From: Amoebophrya sp. A120
Lineage: Eukaryota > Protista > Dinoflagellata
Assembly (NCBI GenBank): GCA_905178155.1
Contig: CAJINV010000001.1
Coordinates: forward strand, 9,445,865-9,509,864
DNA length: 64,000 nucleotides
Direction: 5' to 3'
The translations under genes were made by a program, and so were the position numbers. The notes beneath the pieces are model-generated. The model did not search any database, was not told the DNA's origin, and worked only from the letters and a program-made list of their open reading frames with translations. Of the stretch, positions 52,917 to 59,830 are shown piece after piece; position 1 is the first letter of the stretch, and the number at the start of each line of letters is the position of its first letter.

Positions 52917-54610
52917 TCACTCTGCGGCAACAAACTTGGTGTCGTCTGGTACGGGAAAGTCGACGGCGGGATCGGCATTGTTTTCATTCTCGAAGGTCAT
53001 TTCGTTTTCATCCACGACGTCCTCGGACCCGTTCGCGGCGTCCACTTCGGGTGGCAGCCTCGGCGCCAGACTGGCGTCCATGTCCGCCTCGTCGGGCTCG
53101 TTCGGGAGATTCGGGATCGGCAGGTGCACCCTTCCACCACCAAGCAACGACGGCAGCTGAGTCTGCAGGTCCAGGTCAAACAACAACTCTCTCGCGGTGG
53201 GCAGCTTCGCCTTTTCGTTCCTCACCGTTTCGAAAACATACTGGGCCTGCTTCATGGTCTGGCAATCAATGCCGAACACCCGGTACTTGGCTCCGCTGCC
53301 TGGGTTACACTGCTGCTGCACTTGCTGGGCCAGACTGGCGCGAAAATCGTCTGCGGCTTGGGAGGCGGCGGTGGCGGCTTTAGCGTCGACTTTCAGGAAG
53401 CAAACCTTTGGCCTGGTTTTCGCGTCTACCCACGGGGAGATTATCTGAGAGATAGATAGAGGGTTTTCATCTTTTTCATTGACTTACGTATCAAAGAAGA
53501 TTCATTCTCCGCTGCTCGTAGTCGTGGCATGATACGGCTGCTACTGTAGAAGCAACTGAAAAATAAGCCAGAGGAAGCGGGCTCAAGACTAGACAGAGAT
53601 ACGTCCAGGGCGTACTGACACTTAGGTAGAAAAACATAATACCCGCCAAGCCGCTTGAAATATTCGTGGTGCGTTGCACAGGTAGGCCTTGGCAAGCATT
53701 TGCGGGGAGTGGTCTTGCACCGATTGGACTAGTTGTCGGATGTAGCCAAAGTACTTCGTCATCCACACGCCCCATCCTTTCATATCAAAGAGCACGACCA
53801 TCCTGTTTTGTTTTCATCGATCTAACTTCAAGTTGAAGATGAAGCCCACAGACATGTGATGTTCATGTTCTTCAGGCAGCACGACCGCTTGCTTGACCCG
53901 TACACTGGGCAACAGCCCGACGTCAGCTAGCTTCAAGTTCAACATTCGAGCAAGAGCTTCAAAGTAAGTAAGTGAGAATTGCGAAGATTGAAAAAGAAAA
54001 AGCGAAGATTAGTCTGACTCAAACTCTCCACTTACCCGCGACAGAAGGGATAGTGCACATTTATGTCCCCGTAGTCCATGTGCTGGGGGAACAGGAGGTC
54101 TTGCTGGTAGTTTGCCACGGTCCGGACTTGACACGACCTCTCCACCCACTCGTTCGCGTTGCGAAGGAAGAAGTGCAGGTATTTCACGTACTCTTCCATG
54201 TTGTAATCCTGCGGGTTCCAGCAGCCGGTGCGAATCAGAATAATCGGCTCGCCGTTGGTGTTCCGGCCTAAGAAGGTCCAACAGGCCGAGCGCATGGCGA
54301 CCAGTTTTACGTCGGCCCTCGCCGAGGGTAAGCCGTATTTGCCATACCAGCTTAGCGTATTTTGCAGCATCGCCTCCGCTTTTTTCAAGTCCCAATTTCT
54401 CGCCTGCAAGTACCGGATCAGGGCGTGGTCGTTGTTTTCAAAAGATGGTATCCCGGCCAGTAGCGGCTGGGTCGCGGCGCGGAAAGCCTGCAAGAGGTTT
54501 TCCTTTTGTTCTTTCGTTACAAGCTCGCCGGCGACAACATTGGGCGTGGTCAGAGGGCCGCCCTCTTGGCCCTCGTTGCTGGCCACCGACTCAAATTCAG
54601 CTTCGTCCAT
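52917..54610 (-). CDS. CRAL-TRIO/Sec14-like lipid-binding protein; exons 54610..54036, 53802..53643, 53444..52917
   Basis: DHALIRYLQARNWDLKKAEAMLQNTLSW (CRAL-TRIO-N); VLFDMKGW...QDHSPQMLAKAYLCNAPRIFQAAWR|IISPWVDAKTRPKVCF...QLPSLLGG. Two GT-AG introns keep the frame. Confidence 0.9.
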
Positions 54611-55201
54611 ACTTGTGCTGACGAGCGCAAAAGTTTTCTACATTCAAAGCTTTAGAAGGAGCAATGGGTCGTGTCGCAAATTTCTAAATGGGAAAAGCGG
54701 CCAAGTGGTAGTTGTATTTCGGGTAGAATGAGACTTTCCCCTTCGTTGTCACAGAAGGGCAGCCACGGGGGAAAAATGGTGGATCAAAGCTCGAGAGAGA
54801 AACCTCATGTACCAATTTGTGTAAATGGCTGGCTCCATGGACTGCAACACTTGGGGGTGAGAACTTGCGATCAGCTCGCCCTCGACGCGAAAAAAAAACA
54901 TGATGTAGTTGAAATACCGAGGGCATCCAAAAGCAAAACCGAAATGGATTATGTGACGACCGATACTGGATGCTGATGAGTAAGTATTGAGAGTACGTTC
55001 GTGTGCGTGCTCCTCTTTGACGAGCGTGTCACAAGAGCTGACCGTGAAACACATCAGTTCTTCCAGTAGACATCGAACCGGAAGTGCGGCACCGTTGAGC
55101 AAGGTTGTCAACTTTACTTTTTTTCTACTGAAAGAGGTTGTTTGTGCACAATAGACGGTGTGGCGCGGAGGCATCAAGTTGCGGTGTAGTTGTCGGCTGT
55201 T

Positions 55202-56920
55202 TCACTTTTCTACCAGTTGGGGCTTTCGGAAAACGAGCACTGCGCGACCGCAGAGATGTTTCGATGTCAAAAGCGCTCTGCAGGACTGCACTAGCTTTTC
55301 GCCTTTCGTTTTGATCAGGGTTCGCGATAAACCATGCGCAATGTACGCGTCATCAGTTCCTCCTTCCTCGTATCCGATTACACAGCCCCAGTGCGCGTGC
55401 TCCTGTAGTTCTTCGAGAGCACGAGGATTCTGATTTGCCGAGGAAGCTGCAATTATTGGTTCGTGCGAACTTCCGTCCTTATTGTAGGGAATCAAAAGAA
55501 CGCCAGTACTTGTTCCCACATCGTTTTCTCCTCTCCGTCCTGGAGTCAGCATATCAGAAATTCTTGAAAATGCCCCTACTTCATCACCTATCCTAACCAC
55601 TCTCGCACCTACGCGGTCGAGCCCTGACCATTTCGTTTCGAGCAGGAATGTGCCAGCATTTGATGAGGAGATCGCCTCGACGAGAGATGCCATGTCGTCG
55701 CAGGAAAACATTTCGCCATCTGAAGAATACTTGTTTGCCAGTGCAAGTTCAAAGAGCGCGCGGAAGAGACTGGCTCTTGATGATGCTGGCGATTCTTCGG
55801 TCGTCTGCGAAAGCAGTTGAGGAGCTCCATCTGCATGGTTTTGATCTTTGTCCTTTAGATGCTGACCACTATTTTCAACCAGATACGCAATCGCCATGTG
55901 CAACGCAACCAAACCGCAACTTGGCCCGATCTGCCGCTGGTGCGGAAATCCTTCAAGAAAGAAGGTGAAAGCTTTTCGCGACTCATCAAGACGGCTGGAG
56001 AAAAACACCTGGTGCTCCAACGGGCGCTCGTAAAGAAGCCGCGTCCGAAAGTGCAGCATTCCATTACTTCCAGAAGGCGGGTCCACTGCGGCACAGGATT
56101 TTTTCATCGGGAAGGTGGAAGACCACGTCGTACCACCATACTCGCACACCTCAACTTCGCGACTTTCCCGTGCTGCAGTTTGCATTCTGCGTAGTTTTCC
56201 GGCCAGCATGTTTTCAAGCTGCAACACCGATTGTTGCTCCACTTTGTTCGCAACCTTTCGCAGATTGGCGCCTGCTGGCTCGCACGGGAGGAAGTTTAGT
56301 GCTCTCTGGTAGAAGTCGGCGAGGGCGGGCTTGCACTCCAAGTACAAATACGGCGGAAGGGTCTTGAAGTCGAAACCTGCGTCGCTACTGAGTTCTTCTG
56401 TTTGCCGTGGCTGCTCAACAACTTCCGCGGACCCACATCGCCGAGCAAGTTGCTCGTCACAAGCCTGGTCTAAAGCAAGCTTGCCTCCCGCCAACCATCG
56501 CAATACTGCGTGGACGATCTTCTGGCCAAGCCGCTGGCCCCGTAGGTCCGGATGAACCACCAGTGAATACAGCATCGCACAGTTCTGGCGCTCGCTGGTG
56601 ACGAACACCGGACTGATTTTTGCGTGAGCAACAACTCGGGCGCCGGTGCCAGCAGTTGTTTCGGGAGTTTTTTTTTGTGCCCCGTGACCATCTTGTTCAG
56701 CCTCATCTTCGATAGCTTCAACATCTTGAACCACGACGGCGAGATGGCCCCCGCGACCCGCGATGGCGGTTCCGGGTATCTGTTTCATCGAGGACCGCCG
56801 CTCGCCGCGCATGTGCGCCTCTTTCGGCCATTCCAGGTCCAGCAAATCCAGAGCCTGATCGACGAGGCTATCAGGCTGCTCGTACAGGCGGACGAGTCGG
56901 GCGCGAGTCTGAACCAACAT
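55202..56920 (-). CDS. NAA80-like GNAT acetyltransferase fused to an ACTMAP (C19orf54)-like actin maturation protease
   Basis: N-half: LVDQALDLLDLEWP, VVAHAKIS, SLVVHPDLRGQRLGQKI (AcCoA motif), LYLE...ADFY...CEP. C-half: QIGPSCGLVALHMA, YSSDGEMFSCDDM, LLIPYNKDGSSHEP, HAHWGCVIG. Single uninterrupted ORF. Confidence 0.8.
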   Translation of the reverse strand: MLVQTRARLVRLYEQPDSLVDQALDLLDLEWPKEAHMRGERRSSMKQIPGTAIAGRGGHLAVVVQDVEAIEDEAEQDGHGAQKKTPETTAGTGARVVAHAKISPVFVTSERQNCAMLYSLVVHPDLRGQRLGQKIVHAVLRWLAGGKLALDQACDEQLARRCGSAEVVEQPRQTEELSSDAGFDFKTLPPYLYLECKPALADFYQRALNFLPCEPAGANLRKVANKVEQQSVLQLENMLAGKLRRMQTAARESREVEVCEYGGTTWSSTFPMKKSCAAVDPPSGSNGMLHFRTRLLYERPLEHQVFFSSRLDESRKAFTFFLEGFPHQRQIGPSCGLVALHMAIAYLVENSGQHLKDKDQNHADGAPQLLSQTTEESPASSRASLFRALFELALANKYSSDGEMFSCDDMASLVEAISSSNAGTFLLETKWSGLDRVGARVVRIGDEVGAFSRISDMLTPGRRGENDVGTSTGVLLIPYNKDGSSHEPIIAASSANQNPRALEELQEHAHWGCVIGYEEGGTDDAYIAHGLSRTLIKTKGEKLVQSCRALLTSKHLCGRAVLVFRKPQLVEK

Positions 56921-57280
56921 GATCGTGTCCGCAGCTAGTGTAGGCTACACAACAACAAGAAGTATGAACATCACCCAATGAGTTCTGTGGTGAATTGCGA
57001 GTGGCGCGGCTCTTGCAGCTGTAGTTTTTGGGTTGGTCTGTAGCTCCGTTACGAGCTGCAGAGTGGAGAGACTGCTCGCCCCTCCTCCTTGCTTGGCGCA
57101 GGTAAGTGGATGGATCTACTGTGTTGGAAAGAAACACAGTCACGGACCTGATAGCCCTACTCAGAGATGACGGATATGTCTTCAGCCGTCTTGATGACCA
57201 TGGCGGGAGTTCTTGTTGCGGATAAAACGAGAAAAAGACTCCAGGATCAACATGAGCTGGTGACGAACAGTGCAGCTTTT

Positions 57281-58438
57281 TCACACTTCGTAGTCCCACT
57301 CTTCCTTACAGGACAGGCAGATTGCTCGATCCAACCCTTGCTTGTCTTCATTCCTGGAGCCCCAGATCTCAGCTTTCGCAAAATCAACGCTCTTGACTGT
57401 GATCACGTGGCGGTAGCGCACCTCGTCGCTTTCGCATCGTGGACACCTCAGCGCGGGGTCACGTAGTGGAAAGGCTTCCTCAAGCCTATCGGTTGAGTTA
57501 CGGTTTCTTGCGGCGGGGCTTCCAGGTGAGCCCGGTCTGCCGGAAGAATTTCTCTTCGTGAGTCGGTCGTGCGGCCCTGGAAGCAGCTCTGTGGTCGGCA
57601 AATCAACGATATAATCGGTAATGTTTTTTATCCCGGCAGTTTCTAGCTTCGATTGAAGGTACTCGCGACACGCAGGGTTTTTTAAGTTTGTCGCCAAAGA
57701 GCGTGCCTTGGCTTTGTACTCGCGCACTGCCCGGTCAAGCGCCTCGCGCTGCTTCTCCAGCTCCTCCTCGTCCGGTGCGCGATTAGTGGTTCTGGTTGCC
57801 CCGCCGCTGTGATTCGAAGTTACCATGGCAGCTGACGCACCGAAGTCCCTCGCAGGATTACTGCTCGCGTCTCCGGCGATATTACTCGACATTGAGAGCC
57901 GTGCCCGCAGGTTGTCGAGGAGACGTTTCGCCTCCTCGGATAGGACATTTCGGGCCTGTCCGGCGTCAACCACTTCAGCGGAGGGTGCACTACCGAGCAG
58001 TTCCGGCTCACTAACGTCTCCCTTTCGGTTTTCTGCTTTAGATTCGTCCACGCGACGTCGCTTCGTGCCACTCGCACTGGCAGACACAGAGTCGTCCTCC
58101 CGCTCTTTGGCGCTCGTTTCCCCTGCTTCCAAAGCCGGACGTTTTCTGTTCGCAGACCCAGTGCTGGGCCCACTTAGTGTAGGTAGAACCGAAGAGAAAA
58201 ACTTGACGAAGCACTTCTCCTCCACTTTATTTGCATCGTACCAGGACGCGTCTTGCTGCACAGGCACAGCGGATGTGAGGACTTTCAATGCCGCAGCACG
58301 CATGGACTCGATTGCGGTGAAATCGAATGCCGGCTTCGTCTTTTGAGCGGAAGCAATGGATGAAGAAGAGGCTCCACCAACCACGGTATTTCCACGTCCT
58401 GGCTGGCGCTGCCAACGGGGCTTGAAAGAGGATTTCAT
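57281..58438 (-). CDS. TFIIS-like protein (central-domain-like helices plus C-terminal zinc ribbon)
   Basis: YKAKARSLATNLKNP (TFIIS domain II-like); CPRC...CLSCKEEW zinc ribbon. Confidence 0.65.
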   Translation of the reverse strand: MKSSFKPRWQRQPGRGNTVVGGASSSSIASAQKTKPAFDFTAIESMRAAALKVLTSAVPVQQDASWYDANKVEEKCFVKFFSSVLPTLSGPSTGSANRKRPALEAGETSAKEREDDSVSASASGTKRRRVDESKAENRKGDVSEPELLGSAPSAEVVDAGQARNVLSEEAKRLLDNLRARLSMSSNIAGDASSNPARDFGASAAMVTSNHSGGATRTTNRAPDEEELEKQREALDRAVREYKAKARSLATNLKNPACREYLQSKLETAGIKNITDYIVDLPTTELLPGPHDRLTKRNSSGRPGSPGSPAARNRNSTDRLEEAFPLRDPALRCPRCESDEVRYRHVITVKSVDFAKAEIWGSRNEDKQGLDRAICLSCKEEWDYEV

Positions 58439-59830
58439 TGTGGAATCTTCTACGCTTTATGCGACTGACACTGACTTTCGTTTTCAAACTGAATCGCTTT
58501 CGCTCCGTAGGGGCTGTGGGTCGTCCACGATTCACTCCATTACCTCCTCTGCCTGTCTTGAACACCAAAGCGGCAAAGACGAGCGCATGTTTTCTCTCTC
58601 AGATTCCTATGCCCTTCGAGTTTTCTACTACTACTTTCCATATTAAAAACCCGAATGTTGGCAAATCAATTGAGTGTACCAGTTGGATTTGGAATATTGC
58701 TTACACGAGGGAGGAAGATCGAGAACAATGCGAGACGATCGTCGCGGCATATTGACGACCCGGAACGAATCCGACCACGGGGGCTCAACCGTAGCAGCGT
58801 TGCTACTCGCGACCAGAATGATCACGAACTATATTTTTAAAACACTTGCTTCACACACGAGCAGCGACACCAGACCGCCGCCATCATTCAAGTCAAGCTT
58901 GTGGGTACTTATAGATACATAGATACTTTCACCGTTAGGAGGTTGGTCTTTCATGTTTAATGAGGATGGTCACACGGAGCCGCTTCTTGAAAGGTGTTCT
59001 TTTATCTCATACGTCTAGCGCTACTTCAATAAAAAAGGACAACTTTTTGTTGGAGCTGCTTTAATAAAATTGCTGCTTTCATAAAATTGCTTAACAATAA
59101 GTGAGCATGGTGTCATGTTGCCCTGAGCGCATTCGGCGCGAACATTTTGTAGAGAAGAGCATCGAGAACGAGAAGGGTTTTCTTTGTGTATATTATTGGA
59201 CATGTACGTCTAAACATGGGCTTTCTTCTTCATACGATAGAAATACAAATAGACTACGAAGTTCTCCAGTTGTACCAGTTAAGTCTCGCGCAGCATAATT
59301 ACATTTGCAAAAGTCAAAGCAGTTTGCTTTTTTATTTTAGTTAGTTACTTTCTGACAGTGCCAACTTAAACTACGAGTAGCGGACGTGATGAATAACAAT
59401 AACCACAAATGCTGAGTCAATTCGATCGAAAAACCATCAGCAAGACCGTATGTTGTGCGCAACGGCGTGCCTGTGCATCTTCTAGATCGTGAACGCCCCT
59501 TGGTCTTCCTTGCGCTTTTTCGCCCGCGCTCCGCCATCATTCGGTGACGGCGTCCGGGGAGGTCGCATCGTGGGGCTTGGGGGTGGAGACATCTCGCGCC
59601 TGGGCGTTTGCGGCGGGCCGTGAGGATGAGCACGAGGCCGAGGGCTCCGGCTTTTGGTTTGCATCTGCGACCCCCGCGACGGTGTGACGGGAGGCGTTCT
59701 GCCCGATGTTCGCGGAGTAGGTGCCGGGCTCGCTACGCGCGAGCTTGCTGCTGAAAGAGGTCCACCTGCTCCGAGTCGACCGTCTGAGTAGCTTGACGGC
59801 GCGGGAGATTCCAGTAACCGTTCCCAGTAA

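What the first reader, a model, noticed from the sequence alone, without database searches (positions are those of the whole stretch)
55202..56920. NAA80-ACTMAP fusion: both actin N-terminal maturation enzymes in one protein
Seen: one 572-aa ORF. Its N-half matches my recollection of NAA80 (L.D..ADL...WP, GHA.LS, VV...LRG.G.G, L.L....FY...EP). Its C-half matches my recollection of ACTMAP/C19orf54 (Q.GP.CGLVAL.MA, Y...GEMFS..DM, LLIPY..D..HEP, AHW), with Cys and His retained. Established: in animals ACTMAP removes the acetylated initial Met of cytoplasmic actin and NAA80 then acetylates the new acidic N-terminus; they are separate genes. Inference: a Rosetta-stone fusion that could channel the substrate, implying animal-type actin maturation in an alveolate parasite.
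Basis: partly seen in the sequence, partly recalled or inferred. Interest (0 to 1): 0.85.

Follow-up and report, generated by a model that had tools for sequence, protein, structure and literature searches.

The report
Fused actin-maturation enzyme (NAA80 + ACTMAP)
One gene of this parasitic dinoflagellate-like genome (probably Amoebophrya) encodes, in a single protein, relatives of both enzymes that animals use as separate proteins to trim and re-acetylate the tip of actin, and the same fusion occurs in many distant protists, so this pathway is not animal-only as recent reviews state.

Summary
A single 572-aa ORF (55202-56920, minus strand) carries an N-terminal GNAT acetyltransferase domain and a C-terminal ACTMAP-like cysteine protease domain.

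The interpretation held up. A profile of 125 relatives hits Drosophila and human NAA80 at 110 and 106 bits, against 49 bits for the next GNAT in the PDB. The C-half passes Pfam's ACTMAP-like_C cut-off and keeps the invariant Q330/C335 and near-invariant H510. An AlphaFold model (pTM 0.79) has NAA80 as its best structural match.

The gene is single-copy in its genome. The genome's actin starts M-A-D-D-E, a suitable substrate.

The fusion is not unique to this organism. At least 132 proteins share it, including Amoebophrya, stramenopiles (Incisomonas, Hondaea) and diplonemids. A conserved connector of about 60 residues is absent from the stand-alone enzymes. Animal ACTMAPs form one stand-alone clade.

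Some members sit in NCBI/UniProt under automatic names such as "Actin maturation protease". I found no paper describing the fusion, and a 2025 review calls the pathway animal-exclusive.

Activity on actin is inferred, not shown. I rate it a new variant of a known kind.

The parts
55202..56920 (-). Complete coding sequence, 572 aa plus stop codon (55202-55204). It is the single copy of this family in the genome.
56273..56920 (-). NAA80-like GNAT acetyltransferase domain (aa 1-216). NAA80 substrate-contact equivalents are W31 (56828-56830), K33, R41, K101 (56618-56620) and S119 (56564-56566). The acetyl-CoA motif is R127-G-Q-R130-L-G132. F203-Y204 is invariant in the family.
56636..56743 (-). 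Insertion 1 in the GNAT domain (aa ~60-95). It has low pLDDT. The Amoebophrya A25 orthologue has a longer loop at the same place.
56363..56479 (-). Insertion 2 in the GNAT domain (aa ~148-186). It is specific to this strain, predicted disordered, has no intron-like ends, and is retained in the RNA-like contig.
55991..56272 (-). Connector (aa 217-310). It has a conserved helix (aa 229-252, with family-conserved E236) and a strand (aa 289-294, the family 'VWLRKRL' motif). The corresponding profile nodes ~154-215 are matched by neither stand-alone NAA80 nor stand-alone animal ACTMAP.
55205..55990 (-). ACTMAP-like papain-fold cysteine protease domain (aa 311-572). Q330 is at 55931-55933, the nucleophile C335 at 55916-55918, and H510 at 55391-55393. 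N480 sits where the family has Asp.
55790..55867 (-). Insertion 3 in the protease domain (aa ~352-377). It is specific to this strain and has low pLDDT.

Best explanation
The gene encodes a bifunctional actin N-terminal maturation enzyme. The proposed route for this organism's actin, encoded M-A-D-D-E-V-Q, is as follows. The initiator Met is removed and Ala2 is acetylated co-translationally by the general machinery. The C-terminal ACTMAP-like protease (Q330/C335/H510) then removes the acetylated first residue and exposes Asp. The N-terminal NAA80-like GNAT domain, held beside it by a conserved connector, acetylates the new acidic end to give Ac-D-D-E-actin. Shown here: the domain identities, retention of catalytic and substrate-contact residues, single-copy status, a suitable actin N-terminus, and conservation of the fused architecture across Alveolata, Stramenopiles and Euglenozoa. 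Inferred: that both halves are active, that actin is the substrate, and that fusion couples the two steps. In animals that coupling may instead come from both enzymes docking on profilin.
For: The ORF is intact. Pfam PF21646 and PF00583 are both above their cut-offs. The family profile of 125 sequences hits Drosophila NAA80 at 110 bits and human NAA80 at 106 bits over the whole domain, with the next GNAT at 49 bits. A leave-out profile scores the window protein at 176 bits across GNAT, connector and protease. In the family, Q330 and C335 are 125/125, H510 is 116/118, W31 is 104/108, and position K101 is basic in 85/115. These correspond to DmNAA80 W36/K73/S88 (W36A and R43A mutants are dead) and to human ACTMAP C132. 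The AF2 model has pLDDT 77.5 and pTM 0.79. Foldseek's best E-values are human NAA80 (6nas, 6nbe), the highest target TM is 0.76 for 5wjd, and the protease half matches the papain-like phytochelatin synthase 6th5. The genome has one copy and no separate ACTMAP. Two conventional actin genes begin MADDEVQALVVDNGSG. 72/72 and 71/72 scanned relatives carry PF21646 and PF00583. Named carriers are Amoebophrya A25 and AT5.2, Incisomonas, Hondaea, Diplonema and Flectonema. An RNA-like contig is colinear over the whole ORF.
Against: No biochemical or mass-spectrometric data exist for any member. The window copy has Arg (R130) at the first Gly of the acetyl-CoA motif RxxGxG; 108 of 125 members have Gly, and only 7 including this copy have Arg. 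It has N480 where 116 members have Asp. It carries three disordered insertions, and on its own it matches NAA80 only weakly (E 0.94). The R43 equivalent is alignment-dependent (R41 or H36). M-A-D-D-E could simply remain Ac-Ala-actin, as in plants. The RNA evidence is a Logan contig whose RNA nature is only inferred, and it also spans the upstream gene. Three true RNA-seq runs laid no reads.
Confidence: 0.7

Rival explanations
1. A real two-domain protein in which only the protease half is active in this strain. The GNAT half would be a degenerate, non-catalytic actin-binding or scaffolding module.
For: R130 replaces the first Gly of the acetyl-CoA-binding motif. There are two large insertions in the GNAT half, one of them strain-specific. 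The single-sequence similarity to NAA80 is weak.
Against: W31, K101, S119, R127, G132 and F203-Y204 are retained. Arg at the same Gly position recurs in six other family members, including Diplonema. The insertions fall in predicted disordered loops outside the core, and the core has pLDDT of about 90.
Confidence: 0.12
2. The enzyme is bifunctional, but its substrate is not actin or not only actin. It could act on other proteins with acidic N-termini or on actin-related proteins, so the link to actin maturation would be by homology only.
For: No functional data exist for any non-animal member. The genome encodes many actin-family proteins (33 matches). Family members diverge strongly, at 20-35% identity.
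Against: In animals NAA80 and ACTMAP are described as dedicated to actin. The residues that read the acidic positions 2-3 are conserved. The organism's conventional actin has the required acidic run behind one removable residue.
Confidence: 0.12
3. A eukaryotic offshoot of the bacterial 'GNAT family N-acetyltransferase/peptidase C39 family protein' fusions (GNAT + DUF3335), unrelated in function to NAA80 and ACTMAP.
For: The ESM Atlas feature search lists those bacterial fusions as nearest clusters, with cosine 0.92-0.94 and the same domain order. The literature notes that DUF3335 is often fused to GNAT domains, and places C19orf54 and DUF3335 in the same papain-like cluster I.
Against: There was no PF11814, PF13529 or PF03412 hit at E<=1, whereas PF21646 passes its cut-off. 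The GNAT half is specifically NAA80-like by more than 55 bits. NCBIfam gives only sub-threshold generic GNAT hits. Scans of about 185,000 prokaryotic genomes found no real member. The Atlas shared-feature counts of 134-149 are below the level typical of true family hits.
Confidence: 0.04
4. An annotation or assembly artefact: two adjacent genes, or an unspliced intron, read through as one ORF.
For: This genome is reported to have many non-canonical introns (unchecked notes). Two insertions are absent from the A25 orthologue. The only RNA-like contig also spans the upstream gene.
Against: The reading frame is uninterrupted for 572 codons. The same architecture occurs in at least 132 proteins, with a conserved connector. 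These include complete ORFs from transcriptome assemblies of Flectonema and Incisomonas. The insertions lack TAT...ATA or frame-preserving GT...AG ends.
Confidence: 0.02

Closest known systems
NAA80 / NatH (human NAA80, PDB 6nas/6nbe/6nbw; Drosophila CG8481, PDB 5wjd/5wje)
   Same: It has a GNAT fold and gives the best sequence-profile and structural match. The alpha1-alpha2 W-P-R/K...R motif, the basic residue at K73 and the Ser at S88 that read the acidic actin N-terminus are conserved.
   Different: It is fused to a protease through a conserved connector of about 60 residues. It has no polyproline (profilin-binding) tract. The window copy has two loop insertions and Arg at the first Gly of RxxGxG. 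It is found outside animals and Amoebozoa, the only groups for which the literature reports NAA80.
ACTMAP / C19orf54 (animal actin maturation protease; Pfam PF21646)
   Same: PF21646 is above its cut-off. It has the Q-x-G-P-S-C-G-L nucleophile motif (human C132), a conserved His and a papain-like fold. It shares one family profile with the Capitella and Tubulanus ACTMAPs.
   Different: Animal ACTMAPs are stand-alone proteins of about 300-350 aa, and most complete ones have P-rich N-termini. They form a single clade with 0.97 support. Here the domain is the C-half of a fusion, with N480 in place of the family Asp and a strain-specific insertion.
Database entries of the same fusion family: Hondaea fermentalgiana GBG31918.1 / UniRef100_A0A2R5GQ67 ('UPF0692 protein C19orf54-like' / 'Actin maturation protease'), Amoebophrya sp. 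A25 CAD7962204.1, Diplonema papillatum KAJ9463134.1
   Same: They have the same GNAT + connector + ACTMAP-like architecture. The A25 protein is the 572-aa orthologue (27% identity, E 1e-54).
   Different: They are named automatically, by the protease half only or as hypothetical or unnamed. None is characterised. The window protein is highly diverged from all of them.
Bacterial GNAT-DUF3335 proteins ('GNAT family N-acetyltransferase/peptidase C39 family protein')
   Same: They have the same domain order, a GNAT followed by a papain-like cluster-I domain. They are an analogous acetyltransferase-protease pairing.
   Different: They belong to a different Pfam protease family (PF11814, no hit here) and have a generic rather than NAA80-like GNAT. 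They are bacterial only and their function is unknown.

Membership tests
NAA80 (NatH) | GNAT fold | tested here: met
   PF00583 scores 27-29 bits against a cut-off of 20.7. The AF2 core has pLDDT of about 90, and Foldseek probability is 1.00 to many NATs.
NAA80 (NatH) | Closer to NAA80 than to any other GNAT or NAT family | tested here: met
   The family profile gives 5wjd 110 bits and 6nas 106 bits, with the next GNAT at 49 bits and NAA50/60/30 at 25-30 bits. The window belongs to that family at 176 bits when left out of the profile. Foldseek on the window model gives its best E-values to 6nas and 6nbe and its highest TM-score to 5wjd. The window sequence alone is only weakly similar (E 0.94).
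NAA80 (NatH) | Residues contacting acidic substrate positions 2-3 (DmNAA80 W36, R38, R43, K73, S88) | tested here: met
   The window has W31, K33, R41 (or H36, depending on the alignment), K101 and S119. Family conservation is W 104/108, basic 85/115 and S 65/118. The R43 equivalent is ambiguous.
NAA80 (NatH) | Acetyl-CoA motif Q/R-x-x-G-x-G/A | tested here: inconclusive
   The window has R127-G-Q-R130-L-G132. The first Gly is Arg here and in 6 other members including Diplonema, while 108/125 have Gly.
NAA80 (NatH) | Acetylates the processed acidic actin N-terminus | not testable with these tools
   This needs an enzyme assay or N-terminal mass spectrometry. A suitable substrate exists: actin starts MADDEVQ.
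ACTMAP (PF21646) | Match to the curated family model above its cut-off | tested here: met
   PF21646 scores 44.2 bits for the whole protein and 49.6 bits for the C-half, against a cut-off of 27. No C39, C39_2 or DUF3335 hit was found.
ACTMAP (PF21646) | Catalytic Cys (human C132) with an upstream Gln, and a catalytic His | tested here: met
   Q330 and C335 are invariant in 125/125 and H510 is present in 116/118. The motif aligns with the animal ACTMAPs P0107 and P0126 in one profile. Human C132 as the nucleophile is from PMC13367750. The human sequence itself was not aligned here.
ACTMAP (PF21646) | Papain-like cysteine protease fold | tested here: met
   Foldseek gives phytochelatin synthase 6th5_B at E 3e-4 and TMt 0.61. 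The Atlas structure rows match ACTMAP clusters at TM 0.54-0.55. No ACTMAP structure was found in the PDB copy by sequence profile or Foldseek.
ACTMAP (PF21646) | Removes the acetylated first residue of actin | not testable with these tools
   This needs biochemistry or mass spectrometry.
Bacterial GNAT-DUF3335 / peptidase C39 fusions | Protease half matches PF11814, PF13529 or PF03412 | tested here: not met
   There is no such hit at E<=1 for the window protein. Only 1 of 72 relatives has a weak PF13529 hit.
Bacterial GNAT-DUF3335 / peptidase C39 fusions | Occurs in bacterial genomes | tested here: not met
   Pattern plus tblastn scans of about 185,000 prokaryotic genomes found only one 32-residue edge match on a chimera-like 1.7-kb MAG contig. 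The scans are limited to a few peptide patterns.

The most novel reading that the evidence does not exclude
The NAA80-connector-ACTMAP fusion is the ancestral eukaryotic form of the actin N-terminal maturation machinery, present before the split of SAR, Discoba and Amorphea. On this reading the separate NAA80 and ACTMAP genes of animals arose by a single gene fission, after which polyproline-mediated docking on profilin-actin replaced the covalent link. Acetyl-residue removal followed by re-acetylation of actin would then be an ancient, widespread eukaryotic trait, lost in fungi and plants, rather than an animal innovation.
Probability: 0.3. Interest if true: 0.8.

Novelty: new variant of a known kind. 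Interest (0 to 1): 0.62.

Why it matters
Current reviews state that NatH/NAA80 and the ACTMAP-dependent cleavage-and-reacetylation of actin are exclusive to animals (PMC11735805). The 2018 discovery paper extended NAA80 only to some Amoebozoa (PMC5924898). A conserved fusion of both enzymes in alveolates, stramenopiles and diplonemids would move the origin of this pathway far back in eukaryote evolution. It gives independent 'Rosetta-stone' support for the functional pairing of the two enzymes. It predicts that the actins of these protists carry Ac-Asp/Glu rather than Ac-Ala or Ac-Met ends. It also offers a compact single-polypeptide tool for making natively processed recombinant actin. For parasites such as Amoebophrya it points to one gene controlling actin's N-terminal state. 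The claim can be tested directly by actin N-terminal mass spectrometry in culturable carriers.

Tried and rejected
- The search for homologous proteins with the whole protein found one relative, and with the GNAT half alone found none. The word index is too insensitive for this diverged sequence. The exhaustive profile search was what opened up the family.
- The genome search with PF21646 on the window's own genome found nothing, not even this gene, so it was uninformative. The family alignment did find the gene.
- A first Pfam tally on the 125-sequence alignment exceeded the size limit and was repeated on 72 sequences.
- My first in-sandbox census of GNAT regions included the connector and was probably inflated. 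It was replaced by the Pfam tally and a node-based census.
A single protein and then a 12-sequence alignment gave no true prokaryotic member.
- NCBIfam gave only sub-threshold generic GNAT hits.
- RNA-seq raw runs X7-X9, labelled with the same species, laid no reads and so gave no test.
- The Science paper on ACTMAP (PubMed 36173861) and the supplement of Drazic et al. are not held. I could not check whether either mentions a fusion or which protists were surveyed.
- The in-frame-intron idea for insertions 2 and 3 was rejected for lack of intron-like ends.
- Inter-domain geometry, meaning the distance between the two active sites, could not be measured because model coordinates are not exposed.
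Full report
**Observation**

The ORF listing shows a single ORF at 55202..56920 on the minus strand. It is 572 aa long and starts with ATG. An in-frame stop lies nine codons upstream. Pfam finds PF21646 (ACTMAP-like_C) at 44.2 bits for the whole protein and 49.6 bits for the C-half, against a cut-off of 27. It finds PF00583 (GNAT) at 27-29 bits, against a cut-off of 20.7. No C39, C39_2 or DUF3335 match was found at E<=1.

**Which organism**

The window lies on contig 1 of a 115.5-Mb, 401-contig assembly. The closest named relatives of the protein come from Amoebophrya sp. A25 (CAD7962204.1, also 572 aa) and Amoebophrya sp. AT5.2. The genome is therefore most likely another Amoebophrya strain (Syndiniales, Alveolata). 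I could not confirm the name directly.

**Is the N-half NAA80 or just a GNAT?**

On its own the sequence is too diverged to tell. phmmer against the PDB gave only E 0.19 for an archaeal GNAT and E 0.94 for 5wjd, which is Drosophila NAA80.

An exhaustive profile search of 1.84 billion representative proteins, seeded with the window protein and one relative, returned 282 hits. I aligned the window protein with 124 of them (A2). The profile of that alignment hits 5wjd at E 1e-30 (110 bits) and human NAA80 6nas at E 2.9e-29 (106 bits), over the whole GNAT domain. The next-best GNAT in the PDB scores 48.7 bits, and other NATs (NAA50, NAA60, NAA30) score 25-30 bits.

The window protein is a genuine member of this family. 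A profile built without it, its two Amoebophrya relatives and P0001 scores it at 175.9 bits. The matches run in order through the GNAT (aa 6-139 and from aa 191), the connector and the protease (to aa 521).

Goris et al. (PMC5924903) identify DmNAA80 W36, R38, R43, K73 and S88 as the residues that bind the acidic substrate, and the W36A and R43A mutants are inactive. Using the alignment (PDB chain index + 9 = native numbering), these correspond to window W31, K33, R41 (or H36 in an alternative alignment), K101 and S119. In the family, W is present in 104 of 108 sequences, the K73 position is basic in 85 of 115, and S is present in 65 of 118.

An AlphaFold2 model of the full protein made with A2 has mean pLDDT 77.5 and pTM 0.79. 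Foldseek against the PDB gives its best E-values to human NAA80 (6nas, 6nbe; 7e-6 to 1e-5). The highest target-normalised TM-score, 0.76, goes to Drosophila NAA80 (5wjd). NAA40 and other NATs rank behind.

**Is the C-half ACTMAP?**

PF21646 passes its curated cut-off. In the family alignment Q330, G332 and C335 are invariant in all 125 sequences, and H510 is present in 116 of 118. Human ACTMAP's nucleophile is C132 (PMC13367750). I did not have the human sequence to align. However, named animal ACTMAPs (Capitella teleta UniRef100_X2B042 and Tubulanus polymorphus XP_074661064.1) match the same family profile over nodes ~217-447, which include the Q-I-G-P-S-C-G-L block.

The nearest solved fold for this half is the papain-like primitive phytochelatin synthase (6th5, TMt 0.61). 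Neither the sequence profile nor Foldseek found an ACTMAP structure in the PDB copy. The second refutation criterion, a generic C39-like domain, is also not met.

**One gene, one transcript?**

The ORF is uninterrupted. The family has a conserved connector: profile nodes ~154-215, made of a helix with a near-invariant Glu and a 'VWLRKRL' strand. Neither solved NAA80 (nodes 12-153) nor stand-alone animal ACTMAP (from node ~216) matches it. In the window protein it is modelled with fair confidence as helix 229-252 and strand 289-294.

Complete fusion ORFs come from transcriptome assemblies of Flectonema neradi (a Trinity transcript marked 'ORF type:complete') and Incisomonas marina.

For this genome, three RNA-seq runs with the same species label laid no reads, so they give no test. 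A Logan assembly (X1) behaves as RNA. It has zero depth in the intergenic bin 54924-55077. One of its contigs leaves the genome at 54035, next to the stop codon (54032-54034) that ends the first CRAL/TRIO ORF. Its 3,248-nt contig is colinear with 55130-58377, without gaps or joints. That contig also spans the upstream ORF, so it does not by itself prove a monocistronic mRNA.

Relative to the family, the window protein has three low-confidence insertions (aa ~60-95, ~148-186, ~352-377). The first is shared, and longer, in the A25 orthologue. The other two are strain-specific. They lack the TAT...ATA/5-bp-repeat ends that other first-stage notes ascribe to this genome's non-canonical introns (unchecked). 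They also lack frame-preserving GT...AG ends. I read them as disordered loops.

**Context in the genome**

The family alignment finds only this gene in the 115.5-Mb assembly (249.7 bits). The next match is a 23-bit generic GNAT. The organism therefore has no separate ACTMAP or second NAA80-like gene.

Two conventional actin genes (contigs 13 and 7) both start M-A-D-D-E-V-Q-A-L-V-V-D-N-G-S-G. This has an acidic run behind one small residue, formally like animal class II actins. In those, the residue after Met is acetylated and then removed by ACTMAP before NAA80 acts (pathway as described in PMC13557074 and PMC11735805).

**How widespread is the fusion?**

An independent Pfam scan of 72 members found PF21646 in 72 and PF00583 in 71.

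Named carriers:
- Amoebophrya A25 and AT5.2 (Alveolata)
- Incisomonas marina and Hondaea fermentalgiana (Stramenopiles)
- Diplonema papillatum and Flectonema neradi (diplonemids, Euglenozoa)

These come, with lineages checked. Flectonema is not in the taxonomy copy, but its protein clusters with Diplonema at 0.98 support.

Scans of about 185,000 bacterial and archaeal genomes, using a central member and a 12-sequence alignment, found no true member. The single hit is 32 residues at the edge of a 1.7-kb MAG contig that otherwise encodes a bacterial ORF on the opposite strand.

In a FastTree tree of the protease domain (152 sequences, midpoint-rooted), the nine long stand-alone ACTMAPs form one clade with 0.97 support. 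This clade includes both named animal proteins. Fusions occupy the rest of the tree. The clade's sister position to Amoebophrya (0.79) may be long-branch attraction. Without an outgroup the tree cannot say whether fusion or fission came first.

Five of the nine stand-alone proteins have P-rich N-termini, namely all that start with M and are at least 260 aa long. Only 6 of 132 fusions have such tracts, and the window protein has none. The 2025 review reports that NAA80 and ACTMAP both bind profilin. I infer that animals bring the two enzymes together on profilin-actin, whereas these protists do it covalently.

**Mechanism proposed**

Shown: domain identities, retained active-site and substrate-contact residues, single-copy status, a suitable actin N-terminus, and a deeply conserved fused architecture.

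Inferred: after Met removal and acetylation of Ala2 by the general co-translational machinery, the C-terminal protease removes Ac-Ala. The adjacent NAA80-like domain then acetylates the exposed Asp, giving Ac-DDE-actin. The conserved connector and the high pTM suggest a fixed relative orientation that could hand the substrate over. I could not measure the geometry.

Caveats:
- The window copy has Arg at the first Gly of the acetyl-CoA motif (R-G-Q-R130-L-G). Six other members also have Arg there, including Diplonema.
- It has Asn where the family has Asp in the P-Y-D motif, as does A25.

**Comparison with what is known, and novelty**

The literature held here contains 22 papers mentioning ACTMAP and 55 mentioning C19orf54 or UPF0692. 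None describes a fusion. No paper combines NAA80 with 'protists'.

[quoted passage not shown] Drazic et al. 2018 had noted an NAA80 orthologue in some Amoebozoa and its absence from fungi and plants. A 2023 classification of papain-like proteases lists C19orf54 as being of unknown function. It notes that a different family, DUF3335, is often fused to GNAT domains in bacteria. The ESM Atlas lists those bacterial fusions as feature-space neighbours, but Pfam, NCBIfam and the PDB profile separate them from this family.

Members of the fusion family are already in public databases under automatic names. Hondaea GBG31918.1 / A0A2R5GQ67 is named 'Actin maturation protease', with GNAT domains precomputed. 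The Atlas holds this very sequence. So the architecture is catalogued but, as far as I could search, not remarked upon. The Science paper that named ACTMAP and the supplement of Drazic et al. are not held, so a passing mention there cannot be excluded.

**Verdict**

This is a real, intact, single-copy gene for a NAA80-ACTMAP fusion. It belongs to a large, uncharacterised, apparently eukaryote-wide family. I class it as a new variant of a known kind: two known enzymes in a conserved fused form, in lineages where the pathway is said not to exist. Confidence in the architecture is about 0.95. Confidence that it matures actin as proposed is about 0.7.

Noticed in passing
window 54035-54610 (minus strand): Directly downstream on the same strand lies the first exon of a CRAL/TRIO (Sec14-like) gene (PF03765 at 30.6 bits, plus a partial PF00650). 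The RNA-like contig leaves the genome at 54035, as at a splice donor. The Amoebophrya AT5.2 gene model P0006 merges CRAL_TRIO domains with the fusion. This suggests conserved synteny and an over-merged annotation there.
   Followed up: partly
window 57281-58438 (minus strand): The upstream 385-aa ORF has no Pfam match and a C-terminal pair of CxxC motifs (CPRC...CLSC). It is assembled in the same 3,248-nt RNA-like contig as the fusion gene, which is separated from it by only 360 nt. This could reflect polycistronic transcription or overlapping UTRs.
   Followed up: no
L002 (G000:C13:3121083-3124505) and L003 (G000:C7:4520385-4523789): Two conventional actin genes have identical first ~145 residues (MADDEVQ...). 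Both are interrupted at the same point after '...SPAMYVAIQ', presumably by an intron. A divergent actin-like gene on contig 1 (L001) starts MAGVIANQPVVLDNGSG, without an acidic N-terminus.
   Followed up: partly
L011 (JANOEW010000629.1, Amaricoccus sp. MAG, 1-1746): About 30 residues at the contig edge (…RGRGYGCLLMQLLERQAVRLGYHYMYLWT) match the eukaryotic fusion family's GNAT motif at 63% identity. The frame then dissolves into GC-rich sequence overlapping a 514-aa bacterial ORF on the other strand. It looks like an assembly chimera in a bacterial MAG.
   Followed up: partly
runs X7-X9 over window 54000-58600: Three 2026 RNA-seq runs carrying the same species label as the DNA holders laid not a single read on 4.6 kb that includes three expressed-looking genes. 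The label probably covers a different, highly diverged strain, or the libraries are host-dominated.
   Followed up: no
proteins P0105, P0107, P0126, P0135, P0147 (stand-alone ACTMAP clade): Stand-alone ACTMAPs of the animal clade (two of the five are named animal proteins) begin with polyproline stretches such as MSSSLPPRPPPLPPVPPPLP. Fusions almost never have them (6 of 132). This fits profilin docking replacing covalent linkage.
   Followed up: partly
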